A stretch of 63,421 nt of DNA, the filler included, from Octopus bimaculoides (taxonomy: Eukaryota): the NCBI RefSeq assembly GCF_001194135.2. It is 7 parts of 6 records of this genome, joined end to end, with 100 filler letters (N's around TTAATTAATTAA, not from the genome) between each part and the next. Parts side by side here need not be neighbours in the genome. Positions count along the whole stretch, not along the records: positions 39,543 to 50,622 come from NC_068983.1; 6 more parts are not named here. One strand, given 5' to 3'. A program made the translations under genes and the position numbers. A model generated the notes under the pieces. It made no database searches and had not been told where the DNA came from. It saw only the letters and a program-made list of their open reading frames with translations. This document shows, piece after piece, positions 39,305-50,622 of the stretch. How positions within the stretch are numbered: the stretch's first letter is position 1; the number at the start of each line of letters is the position of its first letter.

Positions 39305-40324
39305 ATATATGTATATATATATGTATATATATATGTATATATATATGTATATATATATGTATATATATGTATATGTATGTATATATATATATGTATATAT
39401 ATATATGTATATGTATATGTATATATATATATGTATATATATNNNNNNNNNNNNNNNNNNNNNNNNNNNNNNNNNNNNNNNNNNNNTTAATTAATTAANN
39501 NNNNNNNNNNNNNNNNNNNNNNNNNNNNNNNNNNNNNNNNNNATATATACATGTATATTATATGCACATAAATTTAGGTAATATATATTTGTATATGTGT
39601 ACTCATACACAAACACACACGAACGTACAGTACAAAGAATGGGGCTGTTGACATATTTATTGTTAAATGTTAATATCGATTATGATATTTTTAAGTTGGC
39701 GTAGCTTTCTTCTAACTATGCGCATGTGTACACACACACACACACATACACACACTCTACTGACATAATAGGATTCAAAACATTAGTGGGATTCTGAAGC
39801 AAATTTACATCATATTGTTTTGGCTTTTGTTTTTCATTAGTTCGTTACTTTGGTGTCGGAAGTCTTCAAACGCAATGAAAGACAAGTTTATATCTTTCAT
39901 CGTAAGTCCATGGATTTTCGCGTGCATGCAGTGTATGTATGAACGATCGTATGTGTGCTCATGTATGTATGTATGTATGTATGTATGTATGTATGTACGT
40001 ATGTATGTATGTATGTATGCATGTATTTACCCAAGCCTACACACATATCCAATTTCCCGCCCACGCTAGCTCCTAATACTTTGTCAGTAGTAATTTCGAT
40101 ACCATCTGTTGATATAGTGGTAGTGGAATATCGTGTTGTGGGCTTCGGATGGTTAGAACTAGAGTGGTGGTGTGAATACTTCTGACATAACAGAGATTTG
40201 CATCCGGTATCTCAATCTAGTTCGAATAATCTATTGAAGTTAGTGAAGTAAATTTATTTGCCAGATAGCATTTGCTAATTCATTCGATTGTATTTAAAAT
40301 GTCTGGTGTCTTGGAAACGCTTTG

Positions 40325-40368
<44 letters not shown>

Positions 40369-40391
40369 GCACGCACGCACGCAAGCACACG

Positions 40392-40456
<65 letters not shown>

Positions 40457-40642
40457 TTTCGTTAAAGCGATTACGAAGGCGATACCGTTGACATATGTCT
40501 TACTCGTTAATATCGATCATAATGTTTTAAAGCTGATGTATCTTTCTTCTACTTACCATATGTAGCGAAAGTTGTGGCATTCCTCTTATGTATTTGAAAG
40601 TAGATTTCGAAAAATGTAATAAATATGATATATAACACACAT

Positions 40643-41172
40643 GTGGAGGCGCAATGGCCCAATGGTTAGGGCAGTGGACTCGCGGTCATAGGATCGCGGT
40701 TTCGATTCCCAGACCGGGCGTTGTGAAAGCTCCACGAGGCTCCGGCAGGGGATGGTAGCGAACCCTGCTGTACTCTTTCACCACAACTTTCTCTCACTCT
40801 TACTTCCTGTTTTTGTTGTTCCTGTAATTCAAAGGGTCAGCCTTGTCACCCTGTGTCACGCTGAATATCCCCGAGAACTACGTTAAGGGTACACGTGTCT
40901 GTNNNNNNNNNNCTCCGGCAGGGGATGGTAGCGAACCCTGCTGTACTCTTTCACCACAACTTTCTCTCACTCTTACTTCCTGTTTTTGTTGTTCCTGTAA
41001 TTCAAAGGGTCAGCCTTGTCACCCTGTGTCACGCTGAATATCCCCGAGAACTACGTTAAGGGTACACGTGTCTGTGGAGTGCTCAGCCACTTGCACGTTA
41101 ATTTCACGCGCAGGCTGTTCCGTTGATCGGATCAACTGGAACTGTCGACGTCGTAAGCGACGGAGTGCCAAC
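40643..41172 (+). mobile_element. tRNA(Arg-like)-headed SINE family C with 16-bp TSD
   Basis: GTGGAGGCGCAATGGCCC..GGTTTCGATTCCC head; TSD ATATGATATATAACAC at 40623-40638 and 41187-41202. Internal about 170-bp duplication across a 10-N gap. Confidence 0.88.
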
Positions 41173-41499
41173 AGCAAAACACATACATATGATATATAAC
41201 ACGCGCGCGCGCACATCACTGTATCGACCGGAGTAGTGGATATTGGTTTTACACGGCTGATAACAACGCGCTTCCTCGCATTGTTCTAGTCTTCGATGAT
41301 GCTACCTTGCTGGCTAAGCGAGCAGGCTAACATTCCCCCTAAACGAAACGACAGTCCGTGGAAGGTTTATACTATTTTCGGCTGGAAGGGTTGGAGCAGC
41401 GTGAAATGAAGAACACAACACACCACGATCTTGCGATCGTGAGAGACACTCTCTGACCACTCGGCCACACACCTTCACACATACACACACACACACACA

Positions 41500-41825
41500 T
41501 GACTCAGTAGTTAAAGCGTCGAGCGTACAATCATGAGGCAGTGAGTTCGATTCCCGGACCGGGCTGTGTGTTGTGCTCTTGAGTAAGACATTATATTTCA
41601 CGTTGCTTCAGTTCTCAGATGAAGAAATGAATTTCGACGTCACTGATGCCAGGCTGTATTGGCGTTTCCGTTTCCCTTGGATAACATCAGTGACGTGGAG
41701 AAGGGAGACTAGTATGCATGGGCGACTTCTGGTTTCTATAAACAACCTTACCCGGACTTGTGCCCCGGAGAGGAACTTTCTAGGTGCAATCCCATTGTCA
41801 TTGATGACCGAAGGGTATCTTTACC
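41500..41825 (+). mobile_element. tRNA-derived SINE family D with CORE-like central domain
   Basis: GAGTTCGATTCCC B-box, then CTTGAGTAAGACATTATATTTCACGTTGCTTCAGTT..AGAAATG. A degenerate inverted copy lies at about 41320-41470. Confidence 0.75.
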
Positions 41826-41830
41826 TTTAT

Positions 41831-41863
<33 letters not shown>

Positions 41864-42341
41864 CACACACACATACACATATATATATAAATGAAACATT
41901 CAAACACAGACTTGAAGTTAGATGTCACTACTGTTCATATCATCTGTGGATAAATTCAAAATTTGATGATATCACCAGTAGTGGCATGGGTGGATTGCAG
42001 TTATAATAGCTTTAAACAGCTATGAATTATAAATTTGCACGAAGCGTAATGATGCTTAATAAGCATCTACCTGCTAGAAATAGGAGATAAGTCTTAAATT
42101 AATCCACCGTAGTGCACCAATATGAAATACATGCTGAATTTTCAGAATTTTCTTTATACTAGGCCACTGGTTTTAAATTGGTGTTAATTGAATTAATATC
42201 TATTTTATCACCCTTATTATTTAAATTATATATATATACATATATATATATTTGCCAACAGAATGTGGATTTCGCAAAAGGGATGATTTTACTGTTGTTT
42301 TAGCCCCAAGAAATATCGTTTCTAGCTGGCTATACGACACA

Positions 42342-42411
<70 letters not shown>

Positions 42412-43801
42412 ATCATAAAAGAAAACTTAATTGTCTGCTGTACTAGGACACATCATAGGAGAGGAAGCATTTGAGCTACAAAAGAATAGGAAGCAAGGCA
42501 CCTTAAATTAGTTCATTGGTCAGCTATTTTTCAGGAAAAGAACAGCACTAAGGTATCATCTCTTCGGATTATAAAAATTTCAGTGCATGTCATCAGGCAG
42601 TTGCTGGTAGTTGAAGCATCAGTAAAGCACTAAGCAAAATGTCTCGCGGTATCGCATGAGTTTCAATATGTTATGCTTTCATATAGCTCTGAGACCAACC
42701 TGATATTTGAATATTATATCAGCACAACTTTGCTATCAGGTTTTCGTTGTGTTACTGCGCAGCCCTCCAAACTGTATGACTAAGGTTTGATCGCTGATTG
42801 ATGTAGGAGAGTTTCTGGAACTACTGTCTATTCTGTCAGGAAAAAATACTCAAATATTGAGTGAAAAATTAGTCATGCAACATCATCATGAGAAAATTTA
42901 TGGACCATCGTAAAATTCTCCGCCTCATCTCTCTCGCTCTTTCTCTCTGTTTCACTCACTCTGTACACGCACGCACACACACACACACACACATATATAT
43001 NNNNNNNNNNNNNNNNNNNNNNNNNNNNNNNNNNNNNNNNNNNNNNNNNNNNNNNNNNNNNNNNNNNNNNNNNNNNNNNNNNNNNNNNNNNNNNNNNNNN
43101 NNNNNNNNNNNNNNNNNNNNNNNNNNNNNNNNNNNNNNNNNNNNNNNNNNNNNNNNNNNNNNNNNNNNNNNNNNNNNNNNNNNNNNNNNNNNNNNNNNNN
43201 NNNNNNNNNNNNNNNNNNNNNNNNNNNNNNNNNNNNNNNNNNNNNNNNNNNNNNNNNNNNNNNNNNNNNNNNNNNNNNNNNNNNNNNNNNNNNNNNNNNN
43301 NNNNNNNNNNNNNNNNNNNNNNNNNNNNNNNNNNNNNNNNNNNNNNNNNNNNNNNNNNNNNNNNNNNNNNNNNNNNNNNNNNNNNNNNNNNNNNNNNNNN
43401 NNNNNNNNNNNNNNNNNNNNNNNNNNNNNNNNNNNNNNNNNNNNNNNNNNNNNNNNNNNNNNNNNNNNNNNNNNNNNNNNNNNNNNNNNNNNNNNNNNNN
43501 NNNNNNNNNNNNNNNNNNNNNNNNNNNNNNNNNNNNNNNNNNNNNNNNNNNNNNNNNNNNNNNNNNNNNNNNNNNNNNNNNNNNNNNNNNNNNNNNNNNN
43601 NNNNNNNNNNNNNNNNNNNNNNNNNNNNNNNNNNNNNNNNNNNNNNNNNNNNNNNNNNNNNNNNNNNNNNNNNNNNNNNNNNNNNNNNNNNNNNNNNNNN
43701 NNNNNNNNNNNNNNNNNNNNNNNNNNNNNNNNNNNNNNNNNNNNNNNNNNNNNNNNNNNNNNNNNNNNNNNNNNNATACGCATATGTTAAATGAATTCTT
43801 T

Positions 43802-43893
43802 TATTTCCGACATATGTTTCGAAGATTACAAATGGTTCCTTCCAAATGAATAAGTGATGTTGATAAAGATGTAATCTTCTCTTCAGGGAAATA
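43802..43893 (-). ncRNA. Type I hammerhead ribozyme, canonical core (left arm of palindrome)
   Basis: Minus strand reads tatttcc-CTGAAGA-gaagattaca-[39 nt loop]-tgtaatcttc-GAAAC-atat-GTC-ggaaata. Stem I is 7 bp perfect, stem II is 10 bp perfect, stem III is 2 bp closed by the palindromic tetraloop ATAT, and the cleavage triplet is GUC. All core nucleotides are intact. Confidence 0.9.
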
Positions 43894-43966
43894 CATAGGA
43901 ACCAGCTTAACCGTAAGACATTTTAACATTCGGTTAAAATGTCTTACGGTTAAGCTGGTTCCTATG

Positions 43967-44058
43967 TATTTCCTTGAAGAGAAGATTACATCTTTATCAA
44001 CATCACTTATTCCTTTGGAAGGAACCATTTGTAATCTTCGAAACATATGTCGGAAATA
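43967..44058 (+). ncRNA. Type I hammerhead ribozyme with C3U substitution (right arm of palindrome)
   Basis: tatttcc-TTGAAGA-gaagattaca-[39 nt]-tgtaatcttc-GAAAC-atat-GTC-ggaaata. Same as the left-arm copy except C3 to T at 43974 and one change in the stem II loop. Confidence 0.8.
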
Positions 44059-44429
44059 AAAGAATTCGTTTAGCATATGCGTATTACTCCATTTATATAT
44101 ATATATTATAGACTTGAATATTATAAAGTCATACTTTAACAATCTTATAATTCCATCACGACAATGGTTGTCTAATTGTCTAATATTTATATATATTCAT
44201 ACGTATGTATAGAGGTATTCATGTATGTATACACATACATACATACATACATACATACATACATACATACTCACGTACACGCATACATATATATATATAC
44301 ATACATACTTACACATACACACACACATACACACACACCTATTGCAAGATTATCTAATGCTTGGTGGTTGCTTTTTATCAGCGTTATTTGACGGGCAGTT
44401 TTCTTCTTCAAACGCCTGACAGAATCGTA

Positions 44430-44800
44430 AAACCTAGCAAAGCCGTCCATTCTGATGGAATTAGGACCAAAGTCCTAATGTTGTCGACTATTTTGGCATA
44501 GTGAAAGCATTAGCCACCTTTATTCAGAACCTTAACGAACTGATTCATAATGCCAAACTTTCTATGGAGTAGAAGTAGGATGATTTTTCCGGTTGTACAA
44601 AAGGCCCTTCAACCACACTAAAAATCCCTGGAACTAATATTCGTTGCGGCCATTCTTTGATCACCAAGTGTTTTCCATTGTCTCTGCTATTCCGCATACA
44701 TAAACAGCATGGATATTTGGTGTATTCACTTTGTTTTCACAGGAGAAAGTTGACCATCTTAAAGTCCACGCGTTTCACCCGCAGATGATTAGAACGTTTG
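44430..44800 (-). pseudogene. Chapaev/Transib-related DNA transposase remnant
   Basis: VDFKMVNFLL*KQSEYTKYPCCLC..KEWPQR..LVPG..P.V.PEK, then a frameshift to IILLLLHRKFGIMNQFVKVLNKGG. Resembles the DLKM..GYTKYPCFLC / LPPLHIKLGLMKQFVKAL motifs; family assignment is from memory. Confidence 0.55.
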
Positions 44801-47439
44801 GGTATCTTGAAATCTAGATGTCATGATATAAAATGGATTCCATTTTAGGATTCAGTAATATCAGTTTTTTAAACCTTCAAATTGGGTAAAAACGCCCTGA
44901 CAACAAAATGCATGTTGGGTTGCGTAATTTATAAATATCATCAGAAAACTGAGTTGTTTCTCTCAAAAGGGATAACGGGTGGTGTAAGCGTTTCTCTGTG
45001 CGTATGTGTGTATGCGTTAGGTACACGTGTATTTTTATAGAAATACAAATCGTTTGCATTTGAAGTGTATATCTTGTTTTGTATATAAGTACATGTTGTT
45101 TGCATTTAAAGTGTATGGATACAATTTGTTTTGTATAATAAATATATTTTGTTTACATTTAAAGCATATATTTATAAATATATTTCGATTGCACCTTAAA
45201 TGTATAACTATAATTGTAATTACATTATATCTTTAATAAATTCGAAATGAAATAACAGCTTTACATTATTAGATAGTAAAACAAACTAATGTTTTCAAAT
45301 ACAATTATTATATATATTTACAGATTTCGAACACAAGCGAAACATATGGAAAAAAGCATTGCAGATATAAATCCTCAAATCCAAATTAGTTTCTCGTTAA
45401 AAAAAAAAAGAACCATTGTTTTTAGTTTAAACATTGCAGACTCAAAATCTTTGATGTTCAAAGTTTGTTTTTAAGGTATCGTATAAATGTCAGGGGATGT
45501 TTAAAAATCCAATATCTTTTGTTATTTTCACATTTTAAGATTTGCTTGCAATCTTGAATGTCACACTTGGTGTGATGTTATAAACCACGAGGCGTAGGTG
45601 GTTTAGTTGTCTGAACAGCCCCAGGACAAGAGAAAGAAGGCGAAGTCAACTTCCTAAAGAGATGTAATTATAAACCGCATGAAATTTATTGTGGTCGCTA
45701 TCATTAATTGCTATTAAACTGCTTTTCATGTTAGAATTTGATTTTCAGTCTGATGCACTACTTATTATGCTGCAAGGGAGTCTTTACGAATCGCTTGACC
45801 AATAGGAATAGCACTCTACAGTCTTCAGTTAAGAACGATATATTGGACAGTAGAGCCCTAGATACGCAAAAATCGCGAGTTTCAAGGCTGGAATACCTTT
45901 TAATAAAAGGTTTGATTGATCAGAGCTGACCTAGAGATAAACAACAATTGCATATATTTTAGAACCAATGACAGATACACGCGTCTAATATTTTATTTAT
46001 GAATTTCTTCAGCGAAAGTAATGATACTTGTTAGCTCACTTTATAGAAATTATTCTTCAGAACTCTAATTGCTATCAATAAAAACAGTTTTCGTTTAATA
46101 TACCTGAAACTAGACGCACGCGAAATCTGTTGCGTGTACTTCGTGCACTTGAACAGGAACGGCAGAAATGTAACGACAAAACTATCGAAATAAGTTAAGT
46201 ATGAATAATTTGGCGCTGAAGGAGTGAAATAAATGAAGCAACTTCTATGTGTTCAGTCATTTACTAGCAAAGGGTATATTTTGTATATTGTGTTGTTGCA
46301 TTTCTGAGTGGCGTTGTTCAAATCATTCACTGAGAAGAAAAATGTTAGTTTTGCACAAATAGACACACTTTTATAGGTGTTCGATATTCAATGCTTCGCT
46401 TAGTTTCAATGAACTTGTTCTATTTATGGAGCGCACAAGCCGATTAATTTCATTAAAATCAATGTTATCTCTAGCCCAAAATAAATTACGTGTTTAACCT
46501 CATAAGAACATATGTAGGCACTTCACATTTCAAACGAATCATATAAGTAAATATGTCTATGTAGGTATGTATGTATGTATGTATGTGTGTGTGTATGTAT
46601 GCGTATGTATGTATGCGTATGTATGTATGCGTATGTATGTATACATGTATGTATGTATGTCCGTGTGTGAATGTGCGTGTGATCGAAGCCTATACTTTAT
46701 ATTTATATATGTATGTATGTGTATATGTATGTGTATGTGTATATCTATATGTATATGTGTGTGTGTGTGTGCGTGTATGCGTGTGTGAGCATGTGTGTGC
46801 GTGTGTGTGGATATAAAAAAAAGGCCCAACATTATCATTGAAGACTTTCCTACGATTCAAGTGTACAATAAATATTGATTAGGTTCTTTTTGAACAGACA
46901 CGATATCTTATGATTCAGAGCAGGTGAAATATGTTATTATGAGCCTCGAGGCTTTCTCAAGAGTATCAGATGAGTAAATAAAGTTAAATGGTTTCAAATG
47001 CGTATCGAAGATATATTGTGGTCTCAACGACCTGATCTATCGCCTAGCACACGCCATGATCATGATCGTTAGTAGACTGTAATAATCAGAAAAACATCGG
47101 ACAAAATGTTGAGTGATAATTAGTTAAAAATCTTTACGTTCTGAGATTAAGTCAGAGATCAACAAAAATGAAGAGCTAGTCAGATACACGTTGTGTGGTT
47201 AATAATTTTACGTTACAACCACTTGAGTCTAGGTTTAATTCCGCAGCGTATCATTTCTGGTTGATATGTTCCACAATAAACTCAAGTAAAATAATTTCTT
47301 GTGTATATGACAGAAAGTGTGTGGAAACCCTTCGAATATATGTAATTCCTACATACATGCATACATACATGCATGCATACATACATACAAATATTCATTC
47401 ATACATACATACATACATATACATATATATAAATATATT

Positions 47440-47521
<82 letters not shown>

Positions 47522-47756
47522 TGTGTGTTTGCTTGTGTTTTTTTTCTTCAAGGAGCTGTTTTCTGACAAAGTAACAAAGCTATATCGTTGGAATTTGGAC
47601 ATCAAAAATGGAAATGTACTGCATACTTTAACTGTTCTATCTACAGACTATTCGTAAAGTATTAGTTGGTCACTTTCTTTGACTGGAAATCCTAGCTTTT
47701 TGAGCATACCATATTGAAACAATCAAATAAACATCTTGTAACAACCAAATAAATGA

Positions 47757-48085
47757 TAAAGATCCCCCTTTGGTCATGAATGACCATGGGATTGCTCCTA
47801 GAACGTTTCCTTCCGAGAAACAAGTCCGGACAAGATTGTTTATGGAAGATCAGCAGTCACCCATACATACTAGTTTCCCTTTATCCATATCACCCATGTT
47901 AGCCAAGAGAAAGGCTAACAGCTTGGCACCAGTGACGTCGCAACTCATTTCTACAACTGAACGAACTGGAGCAACGTGAAATAAAGTGTCTTGCTCAAGA
48001 ACACGACACAAAGCCTGGTCCAGGAATTGAATTCACTACCTCGTGATCGTGAGCCTGATGCTCTAACCACTGAGCCATGCACCTA
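47757..48085 (-). mobile_element. SINE family D, near full length
   Basis: Reverse complement matches 41500-41825 (CTTGAGCAAGACACTTTATTTCACGTTGCTCCAGTT; GGTCATTCATGACCAAAGGGGGATCTTT tail). Confidence 0.8.
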
Positions 48086-49695
48086 ACAAAATACAGCAAT
48101 AATTATTCGTAAAACTCTGAATTTATAATCAAGGTAGGGAACCTACAAATATCGAGACAGTTGTTCTTCAACCGTTTCATCATTTCCACTGATTCTTAGA
48201 AGAAATGTTCCATTGTTCGCAATTGTCGTGCAGCTGACTTTATCACTGTCCCAAAGTGCTATAGAAGCATTGGAAAACTTTGGCTAAGGCAGAAGGATAG
48301 GCTCAAAGCTAATCTGAAAGGGATAAATATTCTCTAAGAAACTTATGAGAAAACTTTATTGAATTTCAACGAGTGGATTTTGAAGTGGACTCTCTGAGTC
48401 ATCTTAAAAACTAAGATCAAAGACAGTTTCGAACTTCCGTCCTGGTAAGCCATCGGCGGACTGCAATGCGTTTAAGTTAATCTTAACTTTATATAGTCTC
48501 TGTGAGTTAAAATTTTACTTAGGTGTGTAGGTTTGAGTGGAGTGGTATTTAGGTTGTAGGGTGGTTTGTAGAAGAGAGGTATTTTAGAGAAATTTTTATT
48601 GATTAAATTTGGAGTTGTGTTGTTGTTTAGAATTTATTTATGTATGTAGAAGTTTGTAAGCAGGTGTGAATGCTTAGGCACGTTCATCTTAGATCATTGG
48701 ATTGATTTTTAGGGAGTTCACAAAAAGGATGTGGGTAGGTCTAGAATATGCCAGTAGTTTTAGTTATATTTGCTTTTATTGGATTTAATCCTTTGCTTTG
48801 AAAATGCAAAGGTCAAAGGTTCAAAGTTTAGTCTCGTATTAAAACCTCAGTAATAGGTGTTAGCCTTTTTTTTTGGAGGGGGGGGGGAACGGAATATTTT
48901 AAAGATTCACAAAAGAATGTAAGAAGGTGGTATTTTTGGCTGCTCTGTTTCTTTACTTATTGTTATTTAGGGTATTTCCTTTGTATTTGGAAGGTGGGGG
49001 ATATTAGCCTGGCATTTTATGGTGTTGTTAGTATAGAAATTTGTTTATCTTGTACTTTGATGTTCACAAGAGGATGTGGGTAAGTGTTAAGGTTGTTGGT
49101 CTATATGTTCCTCTCTAGGGGTTCATTGTTCTATCAGCAATTTGATTAATGTGTAGAAATTCTAACCTTTGTGTTTTATGAAGGTAGAATTTGAGGATTA
49201 TAAACATTTCTTCAGCTCAATTTCAAACATGGATATTTTATGATATATCATTTTAGGCCTGTGAATATATACGAAAGTGAAGCATTATAAAAAGTGTGTA
49301 TATACACGAATAAAAATGGGAATGAAATTTAATTTGAAAAATTGATTTAAAAATTTAAAGAAGTGATAAATATAGGAAAGCCTCTTCCAACTTGCTTGCA
49401 CGTAAATATATATTTATATGTGTGTATTTATGTTTGTGGATTTATATTAGAAAATCTGTTGTGAGGATTTTGCTTGGAAATAGGGAAATTTTTTAGATAA
49501 TTTCTATATTAATTGTTTTGTGTAAAACTGTAAAAATGTTTTTTTTATGCATACTATGGGGATAATTTATGGAGTAGGCGGAAGGAGAGAAGATGGTGAA
49601 GTATTTGCATGTTAAACCGTTAGAAAACAATTATTGGTTTCAAATGTTTTACTGTCTTTAAGATTTTATGCCTGCAGCGGTGGGAAATAATCACT

Positions 49696-49728
<33 letters not shown>

Positions 49729-49829
49729 GTATATCACCTTTCGTAATATCATTAATTTCTAGACGTGTCTTTGCTGTTGAACTCAAAGGATCAAAGAATT
49801 CATTTGGACTATATATTATTTTGTTTATT

Positions 49830-50540
49830 ATAGGTTGGAAAACTGCACTGTTATATCGTAGACTCGATATAATATCATTAGTACATGATCCATTTTAGTC
49901 GATTGGAGGGCCAATCTAGTTACGTGAAATGATTTTTGTTTAGCAGAATAGAAATAGATTTTAAAATTAGGCTTTATATTTTTCACTGCTCCGTGATCCT
50001 TTAGCAAAGTTTCATTTTCATAAGATACTTTTAGGTCCAGTCCAATGTTCTTTCATTTCTTCTTTTTATTTACGCAATCTCATCTGTTGAGGCAACTTGT
50101 TTCTTAGCTGTTTTGTTAGTTTAGTTTTGTTACGCAATCCGTCTATCTCGTGGAATCAAGTTCTTGCGGGAACAGACGTGTTTATATGCTTTGCTTTTGA
50201 CAGATCTTAACGTTGAGGTTGTTAATATGCTGCGACAGGTTTGTTTTGAGGATTTCAGTTTCGATGTGGAGTGAGCAATATTTGATATTATCTGTGTGTC
50301 ATTTGATGTTAAATGTATGTGCTGCCCTCTTCAAACCATATACAGATAATTGTATAACGTTGTGATCGGAAGCAGGTGTTGGGATTACCTGAACATTGTG
50401 AATGAAGTCTGTACTGGCAGTAAAGATTAGGTCAAGTATGTTATTTCCCCTAGTTGGACAGGAAACATGAGAAAGTTTTTAGTGGTATCGAGGAGAGCGT
50501 TCATATCACTCTTGCTTTAGTTGTTCAGTTCCAGGTTGGT
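49830..50540 (-). pseudogene. CR1/L2/Jockey-group LINE ORF2 remnant (end of APE endonuclease plus linker)
   Basis: SHVSCPTRGNNILDLIFTASTDFIHNVQVIPTPASDHNVI at about 50345-50470; downstream a degenerate AVKNIK..IGP segment. Confidence 0.75.
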
Positions 50541-50558
50541 TATAGCCATCAGGCTAGC

Positions 50559-50622
<64 letters not shown>

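What the first reader, a model, noticed from the sequence alone, without database searches (positions are those of the whole stretch)
43777..44084. Near-perfect 308-bp palindrome encoding a canonical hammerhead ribozyme in each arm
Seen: 151-bp arms with 4 mismatches and a 5-nt loop. The minus strand of the left arm folds into a complete type I hammerhead (7-bp stem I, CUGAAGA, 10-bp stem II, GAAA, 2-bp stem III with palindromic ATAT loop, GUC). The right arm gives the same ribozyme on the plus strand with C3U, which is one of the four mismatches. Established: minimal type I hammerheads with a palindromic loop III occur in Penelope-like element terminal repeats, retrozymes and newt satellite 2, and cleave best as dimers; C3 pairs with G8 in the active fold. 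Inference: this is a young, non-coding, ribozyme-bearing retroelement. The minus-strand copy may still self-cleave between 43809 and 43808, while the plus copy is probably weakened.
Basis: partly seen in the sequence, partly recalled or inferred. Interest (0 to 1): 0.92.

Follow-up and report, generated by a model that had tools for sequence, protein, structure and literature searches.

The report
Inverted pair of retroelement hammerhead fragments
Two head-to-head copies of a short non-coding retroelement end, each carrying a Penelope-type hammerhead ribozyme motif, sit at the edge of an assembly gap in an unidentified AT-rich eukaryotic genome; the motif is real, but this is an ordinary kind of repeat remnant and part of the palindrome could be an assembly artefact.

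Summary
Arms 43776-43927 and 43933-44084 (152 nt each) differ by 4 substitutions and no indels, around a 5-nt spacer. Each arm carries a complete type I hammerhead: helix I 7 bp, helix II 10 bp with a 39-nt loop, helix III 2 bp with an AUAU loop, and GUC. The minus copy has an intact core. The plus copy has C3U. A descriptor scan found no motif of comparable stringency in 80 Mb of random sequence.

The arm length is therefore set by the contig edge, and an assembly fold-back cannot be excluded.

The motif is not canonical in the sense used in the field. It has no typical helix sizes and no loop1-loop2 contact, and no Rfam hammerhead model scores it. It fits the atypical variants described in Penelope-like elements (PLEs). 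The divergent head-to-head arrangement beside a (TA)n tract also matches published PLE insertion structure.

The 11-kb piece holds no reverse transcriptase or endonuclease ORF, no tandem partner and no other copy. A transcript across both arms would fold as a 152-bp hairpin.

Verdict: decayed fragments of a known kind, of low interest.

The parts
43001..43775 (.). 775-N scaffold gap directly abutting the left arm. This is context, not part of the element. The contig to its left ends in (CA)n(TA)n.
43776..43927 (-). Left arm: the >=152-nt 3'-terminal fragment of the element, reading on the minus strand. Its outer end is cut by the gap.
43802..43893 (-). Type I hammerhead motif with an intact core. 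Helix I 43893-43887 / 43808-43802; CUGAAGA 43886-43880; helix II 43879-43870 / 43830-43821; loop 2 43869-43831; GAA 43820-43818; helix III ACAUAUGU 43817-43810; C17 43809.
43928..43932 (.). 5-nt spacer ATTCG at the centre of symmetry, where the two 5' truncation points meet.
43933..44084 (+). Right arm: the same fragment on the plus strand, continuous with the downstream DNA.
43967..44058 (+). Hammerhead motif with C3U (T at 43974). Helix I 43967-43973 / 44052-44058; UUGAAGA 43974-43980; helix II 43981-43990 / 44030-44039; loop 2 43991-44029, which contains a perfect 6-bp sub-hairpin; GAA 44040-44042; helix III 44043-44050; C17 44051.
44085..44106 (.). Right flank TACTCCATT followed by (TA)6.5 (44094-44106). 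This AT-rich microsatellite may be the insertion target. It could not be compared with the left side because of the gap.
   Evidence: the target preference is taken

Best explanation
The locus holds two severely 5'-truncated copies of the terminal >=152 bp of a non-coding, hammerhead-bearing retroelement of the Penelope-like element (PLE) / non-LTR retrozyme lineage. The copies are joined head-to-head, with their 5' ends at the centre and their hammerheads transcribed divergently, next to an AT-rich microsatellite. Shown: the palindrome, the complete ribozyme motif in each arm, the absence of coding capacity, and the absence of a tandem partner. Inferred: the structure arose in one retrotransposition event. 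Either the PLE enzyme primed on both strands of the target, or the nascent cDNA snapped back on itself. The near-equal truncation points, within 5 nt of each other, favour the snap-back. The arms have since decayed neutrally. At its source element the hammerhead would process multimeric or pLTR-containing transcripts as a dimer through the palindromic helix III. At this locus it is a dead-on-arrival remnant. The only plausible activity here is formation of a long hairpin RNA if the locus is transcribed through.
For: The core and helices are complete, including G10.1-C11.1 and the palindromic 15.2-16.2/loop 3. Both features are listed as hallmarks of PLE hammerheads in PMC4209133. Chance expectation is negligible. 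The long helix II and weak helix III match the PLE variants described for Schistosoma, Drosophila, rotifers, shrimps and mosquitoes. The same paper reports pairs of such motifs 100-700 bp apart on opposite strands; here the cleavage sites are 242 bp apart. PMC8557442 states that PLE insertions are highly 5'-truncated, often carry an inverted 5'-truncated copy immediately adjacent, favour microsatellites, and cause problems for short-read assemblies. PMC11167929 shows that a purified PLE protein cleaves and extends both target strands, prefers AT-rich DNA, and starts reverse transcription a short way downstream of the hammerhead. The divergence pattern is 3 transitions, 1 transversion and no indels. 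C3U is in one arm, and a loss of the loop-2 hairpin pair plus a CpG-to-CpA change are in the other, so each arm carries its own derived change. The dimer cofold forms the 8-bp helix III.
Against: No second family member could be found anywhere. None lies within the 11-kb piece. Rfam hammerhead models do not score the motif. The left boundary and any target-site duplication are lost in the gap. The palindrome sits exactly at a contig edge in an assembly that shows another gap-edge artefact.
Confidence: 0.62

Rival explanations
1. Assembly artefact. The genome has a single hammerhead-bearing copy (the right arm). The left arm would be a fold-back at a contig end, for example the other haplotype or another family copy joined in reverse orientation by the assembler or gap closer. 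The hammerhead would still be real, but the palindrome would not.
For: The left arm begins at the very first base after a 775-N gap. Another gap in the same piece (40903-40912) is flanked by 163 bp that are identical on both sides, which is an unmerged overlap. The 2.6% divergence is within the heterozygosity typical of many invertebrates (my own knowledge). PMC8557442 notes that such insertions disturb short-read assemblies.
Against: A purely computational fold-back gives identical arms, whereas these differ at 4 sites, with derived states on both. Real inverted pairs of these motifs are documented. There are no N's and no low-complexity sequence at the centre.
Confidence: 0.2
2. The arms are copies of a short, non-autonomous, hammerhead-carrying element rather than fragments of an autonomous PLE. 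Candidates are a non-LTR retrozyme monomer or an Sm-alpha-like SINE. The equal arm lengths would then reflect full-length copying of a short RNA.
For: The truncation points of the two arms coincide within 5 nt. That is expected if both cDNAs ran to the 5' end of a short template. Retrozyme RNAs are 170-400 nt, low in G+C and non-coding. Retrozymes are proposed to be PLE derivatives.
Against: There is no tandem direct repeat at the locus, and tandem repeats define retrozymes. The helix sizes and the lack of loop-loop contacts differ from the canonical retrozyme ribozyme. No tRNA-like part was detected.
Confidence: 0.13
3. A palindromic DNA transposon (fold-back element or MITE), or a dedicated hairpin-RNA or miRNA gene, in which the hammerhead-like motif is coincidental.
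For: The sequence is a near-perfect long hairpin. It gives generic sub-threshold hits to long miRNA-precursor models, for example MIR8562 at 108 bits against a gathering score of 211.
Against: A complete hammerhead with 7- and 10-bp helices lying inside a single arm is not expected by chance even genome-wide. The miRNA hits are far below threshold and are explained by any long hairpin. The termini cannot be examined because of the gap.
Confidence: 0.04

Closest known systems
Hammerhead variants in the pseudo-LTRs of Penelope-like elements (Cervera & De la Pena 2014, PMC4209133)
   Same: Type I topology with a full catalytic core and a G10.1-C11.1 pair. Helix II is longer than usual. There is no recognisable loop1-loop2 contact. 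Helix III is tiny and palindromic, which implies action as a dimer. The motifs occur as dispersed single copies or as opposite-strand pairs 100-700 bp apart. The host DNA is non-coding and AT-rich.
   Different: Helix II is longer still (10 bp) and capped by a 39-nt loop with its own sub-hairpin. Helix I is 7 bp rather than 4-5. There is no extra nucleotide between A9 and 10.1. No associated RT/GIY-YIG ORF or pLTR was found within reach.
PLE insertion architecture: an inverted 5'-truncated copy adjacent to the unit (Craig et al. 2021, PMC8557442; PAc biochemistry, PMC11167929)
   Same: Head-to-head inverted orientation, strong 5' truncation, an adjacent microsatellite or AT-rich target, no poly(A) tail, and an assembly break next to the structure.
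   Different: Both copies here are tiny and almost equally truncated, giving a near-perfect hairpin with no full-length unit attached. The tail and target-site duplication cannot be checked.
Metazoan non-LTR retrozymes and amphibian satellite 2 (Cervera & de la Pena 2020, PMC7229834)
   Same: Type I hammerhead with a 2-bp helix III capped by a tetraloop, low G+C, non-coding, and a dimer-dependent design.
   Different: Retrozymes are direct tandem arrays of 170-400-bp units with canonical helix sizes (I = 6 bp, II = 4 bp) and conserved tertiary contacts. Here there are two inverted copies, no array, and atypical helices.

Membership tests
Hammerhead ribozyme, type I | Conserved core C3 U4 G5 A6 N7 G8 A9 / G12 A13 A14 / A15.1-U16.1 / H17 | tested here: met
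   The minus-strand copy has every core position (CUGAAGA, GAA, A..U, C17). The plus-strand copy fails at C3 (U at 43974), giving a U3-G8 combination that is not the U3-A8 covariant described.
Hammerhead ribozyme, type I | Three helices around the core, with helix I open | tested here: met
   Helices of 7, 10 and 2 bp, all Watson-Crick. The unconstrained minimum-free-energy fold of 101 nt recovers helices I and II in both copies. The fold energy is not unusual against shuffles (z about -0.5 to -0.7).
Hammerhead ribozyme, type I | Recognised by curated covariance models (Rfam hammerhead families) | tested here: not met
   No hammerhead family is listed at E<=1 on the 11-kb piece or at E<=10 on 325 nt. 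The likely cause is the 39-nt loop 2 and the long helix II. I could not test a loop-deleted version.
Hammerhead ribozyme, type I | Helix I - helix II tertiary contacts (loop 1 / loop 2) needed for fast cleavage at physiological Mg2+ | tested here: inconclusive
   No internal loop 1 or closing stem is predicted beyond the 7-bp helix I. Helix sizes differ from the 6/4-bp canonical form. A contact involving the large loop 2 cannot be excluded by sequence alone.
Hammerhead ribozyme, type I | Self-cleavage after H17 | not testable with these tools
   This needs in vitro transcription of a monomer and of a direct dimer.
Hammerhead ribozyme, type I | Covariation in the helices across homologues | not testable with these tools
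   Only the two arms exist. No relative was found in the piece, or in metagenome, viral or prokaryote collections. None of the four differences lies in a helix.
Penelope-like element (PLE) | ORF with a telomerase-like RT plus a GIY-YIG endonuclease | tested here: not met
   No open frame longer than 128 codons in the piece. The ten longest non-repetitive frames to the right have no RT or EN Pfam match. The locus can therefore be at most a fragment, not an element.
Penelope-like element (PLE) | Hammerhead within the terminal repeat, close to the 3' end of the insertion unit | tested here: inconclusive
   C17 lies at least 33 nt from the outer end of the arm. The true end is unknown because the mirror arm is cut by the gap.
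Penelope-like element (PLE) | Complex insertion: 5' truncation with an adjacent inverted 5'-truncated copy | tested here: met
   Divergent head-to-head arms with a 5-nt junction, as described.
Penelope-like element (PLE) | AT-rich or microsatellite target and an optional 30-40-bp tail | tested here: inconclusive
   (TA)6.5 lies 10 nt beyond the right arm, and (CA)n(TA)n lies at the far side of the gap. The tail and target-site duplication cannot be defined without the left junction or other copies.
Non-LTR retrozyme | Direct tandem repeats of 170-400 bp, each with a type I hammerhead (at least two consecutive units) | tested here: not met
   Tandem Repeats Finder and blastn find no direct copy. 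The only second copy is inverted.
Non-LTR retrozyme | Canonical helix sizes with loop1-loop2 interaction | tested here: not met
   Helix I is 7 bp without loop 1; helix II is 10 bp with a 39-nt loop, against the definition given.

The most novel reading that the evidence does not exclude
The arms are not random truncation products. They would be complete copies of a very short (about 155-190 nt) hammerhead-carrying RNA that PLE machinery integrates as a snap-back or two-strand-primed hairpin dimer. That would make it a distinct class of palindromic mini-retrozyme whose genomic copies act as hairpin-RNA (siRNA) sources. Its ribozyme, with a 10-bp helix II and a structured 39-nt loop 2, would be a new hammerhead subclass missed by Rfam models.
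Probability: 0.08. Interest if true: 0.45.

Novelty: new member of a known kind. Interest (0 to 1): 0.2.

Why it matters
The locus adds one more example to a very large, already described population. Atypical type I hammerheads number in the thousands per genome in many animals and are tied to Penelope-like elements and retrozymes. It has two small points of use. First, it shows that curated covariance models miss hammerheads with long helix II insertions, so descriptor-based scans are still needed. Second, the near-symmetric hairpin fits the recent finding that a PLE enzyme primes on both target strands, so it could serve as a natural insertion footprint if confirmed by long reads. It does not open a new question.

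Tried and rejected
1. Rfam cmscan at permissive thresholds on the whole piece and on 325 nt gave no hammerhead family. The only hits were generic hairpin or microsatellite miRNA matches far below gathering scores. I rejected a miRNA reading.

2. A blastn search for further copies in the piece found none apart from the two arms.

3. Exact-pattern scans of public collections were unproductive. The 3' half of the ribozyme gave nothing in metagenome, viral and prokaryote genome collections. The 5' half gave two hits (L001, L002), which on inspection are chance 21-mers inside bacterial coding sequence.

4. Organism identification failed. The longest frame of a SINE-like repeat had no protein relatives. 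The ORF that spans the palindrome is not on record in any assembly. That ORF (43801-44142, minus strand, 113 aa) is a by-product of the palindrome.

5. Supplementary files of the two key hammerhead papers were searched for the helix III and core strings, and nothing was held or found.

6. I tested whether the palindrome is the core of a much larger inverted duplication across the gap. There is no inverted similarity between 40913-43000 and 44085-47200.

7. A check for RT/EN remnants found none.

8. A tRNA-derived SINE head was not detected by ARAGORN.

Full report
**What is in the sequence**

The region 43776-44084 is an inverted repeat. It has two 152-nt arms (43776-43927 and 43933-44084), 97% complementary, around the 5-nt spacer ATTCG. 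The arms differ by four substitutions and no indels:
- 43886/43974, C vs T
- 43847/44013, A vs C
- 43792/44068, A vs G
- 43787/44073, A vs G

Position 43776 is the first base after a 775-N scaffold gap, 43001-43775. The right arm 'ends' at 44084 only because its mirror image runs into the gap. The palindrome is therefore at least 309 bp, and its outer boundaries are unknown.

It is not the core of a multi-kb inverted duplication. The contig left of the gap has no inverted similarity to the DNA right of the palindrome.

**The hammerhead motif**

I wrote a type I descriptor requiring:
- helix I
- CUGANGA
- helix II
- GAA
- A15.1...U16.1 with at least 2 bp
- H17
- the 3' strand of helix I

I ran it on both strands of 39543-50622. 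It finds one strict hit, on the minus strand at 43893..43802 with C17 at 43809. It finds the mirror site 43967..44058 on the plus strand only when C3U is allowed.

Helix I is 7 bp (UAUUUCC/GGAAAUA). Helix II is 10 bp (GAAGAUUACA/UGUAAUCUUC) and starts with the usual G10.1-C11.1 pair. It is capped by a 39-nt loop. Helix III is A-U and C-G closed by AUAU, so ACAUAUGU is an 8-nt palindrome.

Unconstrained folding of 101 nt recovers helices I and II in both copies. The energy itself is unremarkable against shuffles.

In 80 Mb of order-1 Markov sequence of the same composition, the descriptor gave 5 hits at its loosest setting and none at helix I >=6 with helix II >=6. Extrapolating by about 0.38 per extra base pair gives roughly 1e-7 expected in this piece and about 0.02 in a 3-Gb genome. 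The motif is not a chance match.

**Why 'canonical' is too strong**

The hammerhead papers define canonical metazoan type I ribozymes by a 6-bp helix I, a 4-bp helix II and loop1-loop2 contacts. Here helix I has no loop 1 and helix II is far longer.

No Rfam hammerhead model reports the site at E<=1 on the piece, or at E<=10 on 325 nt. The only Rfam hits are generic long-hairpin or microsatellite matches to miRNA families, all well below gathering scores.

The architecture fits the atypical variants that Cervera and De la Pena found in Penelope-like elements: a long helix II, no defined tertiary contact, and a small palindromic helix III. Those variants showed weak activity in vitro and only as dimers. 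Two monomers of the present sequence cofold into the double hammerhead with an 8-bp intermolecular helix III, at -41.6 kcal/mol against 2 x -15.7.

**Context**

The piece is 36% G+C with CpG o/e of 0.83. It is full of microsatellites and has no open frame above 128 codons. ARAGORN finds no tRNA, and the longest frames have no RT or endonuclease domain. This is non-coding eukaryotic, invertebrate-like DNA. I could not identify the organism.

There is no other copy of the arm in the piece and no direct tandem repeat. Exact-pattern scans of metagenome, viral and prokaryote collections found nothing real. The two metagenome hits are chance 21-mers in bacterial genes. Covariation and family-level conservation therefore could not be tested.

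**Arrangement and likely origin**

The two ribozymes point away from the centre: minus strand on the left, plus strand on the right. The copies are thus joined 5' end to 5' end.

This matches published PLE insertion structure. Craig et al. describe strong 5' truncation, often with an inverted 5'-truncated copy immediately adjacent. They also report a bias for microsatellite targets and resulting trouble for short-read assemblies. Cervera and De la Pena report pairs of these motifs 100-700 bp apart on opposite strands; here the cleavage sites are 242 bp apart.

Biochemistry on the Anolis Poseidon element gives three relevant results:
- The protein cleaves and extends both target strands.
- It prefers AT-rich DNA.
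- It starts reverse transcription a short distance downstream of the hammerhead.

This gives a plausible route to head-to-head fragments that each retain the ribozyme.

The right arm is followed by TACTCCATT(TA)6.5, and the contig on the far side of the gap ends in (CA)n(TA)n. Both observations are consistent with such a target.

The truncation points coincide within 5 nt. That suggests either snap-back of the cDNA or full-length copying of a short template. This step is inference.

**State of the copies**

The plus copy has lost C3. The U3-G8 combination is not the U3-A8 covariant seen in schistosomes.

The minus copy has lost a base pair of the 6-bp sub-hairpin in loop 2, which is perfect in the plus copy. 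It also carries CpA where the plus copy has CpG.

Each arm therefore has its own derived change. The differences are 3 transitions, 1 transversion and no indels. This looks like neutral divergence of two real copies, or of two alleles, and not like selection or sequencing error.

There is no same-strand partner for dimer formation at this locus. A transcript crossing the centre would fold into a 152-bp hairpin of -238 to -251 kcal/mol rather than the ribozyme fold of -12 to -16 kcal/mol. Self-cleavage here is unlikely. At most, the locus could yield double-stranded RNA.

**Artefact risk**

The palindrome sits exactly at a contig edge. Another gap in the same piece (40903-40912) is flanked by 163 bp that are identical on both sides, an unmerged overlap. 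Gap edges in this scaffold are therefore unreliable.

A purely computational fold-back would give identical arms, which argues against the simplest artefact. A reverse-joined second haplotype, or another family copy, cannot be excluded.

I put about 0.2 on the palindrome being an artefact. In that case a single hammerhead-bearing fragment remains, and C3/U3 could be allelic.

**Verdict**

The hammerhead assignment is sound at the motif level. The family assignment to the PLE/retrozyme lineage rests on architecture and arrangement, not on homology. The locus is a decayed fragment pair of a known and very abundant kind. Novelty: new member of a known kind. Interest: low.

Noticed in passing
window 40740-41075: The 10-N gap at 40903-40912 is flanked by 163 bp that are identical on both sides (40740-40902 = 40913-41075). 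This is an unmerged contig overlap, i.e. an assembly artefact, not a biological tandem repeat.
   Followed up: yes
window 41498-41830 and 47749-48079: A ~335-bp interspersed repeat is present twice in inverted orientation at 78% identity. It looks SINE-like, but ARAGORN detects no tRNA part and its longest frame has no protein relatives.
   Followed up: partly
window 42975-43000 and 43001-43775: The contig left of the 775-N gap ends in (CA)n(TA)n. The assembly break may have been caused by the microsatellite, the inverted repeat, or both.
   Followed up: partly
window 39932-40026, 44198-44335, 46558-46809, 47350-47528: Microsatellites such as (TGTA)n, (ACAT)n and (TG)n produce many sub-threshold Rfam hits to miRNA families (mir-297, mir-3149, mir-466, mir-1277). 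These are low-complexity artefacts, not miRNA genes.
   Followed up: yes
window 43801-44142 (minus strand): A 113-codon ORF runs through the whole palindrome. It is a by-product of the stop-free hairpin sequence, and no gene with this product is on record in the assemblies index.
   Followed up: yes
L001 4645-4665; L002 1500-1520: The only metagenome matches to the 5' half of the ribozyme are isolated 21-mers inside what look like bacterial coding sequences, with no flanking similarity. They are chance hits.
   Followed up: yes
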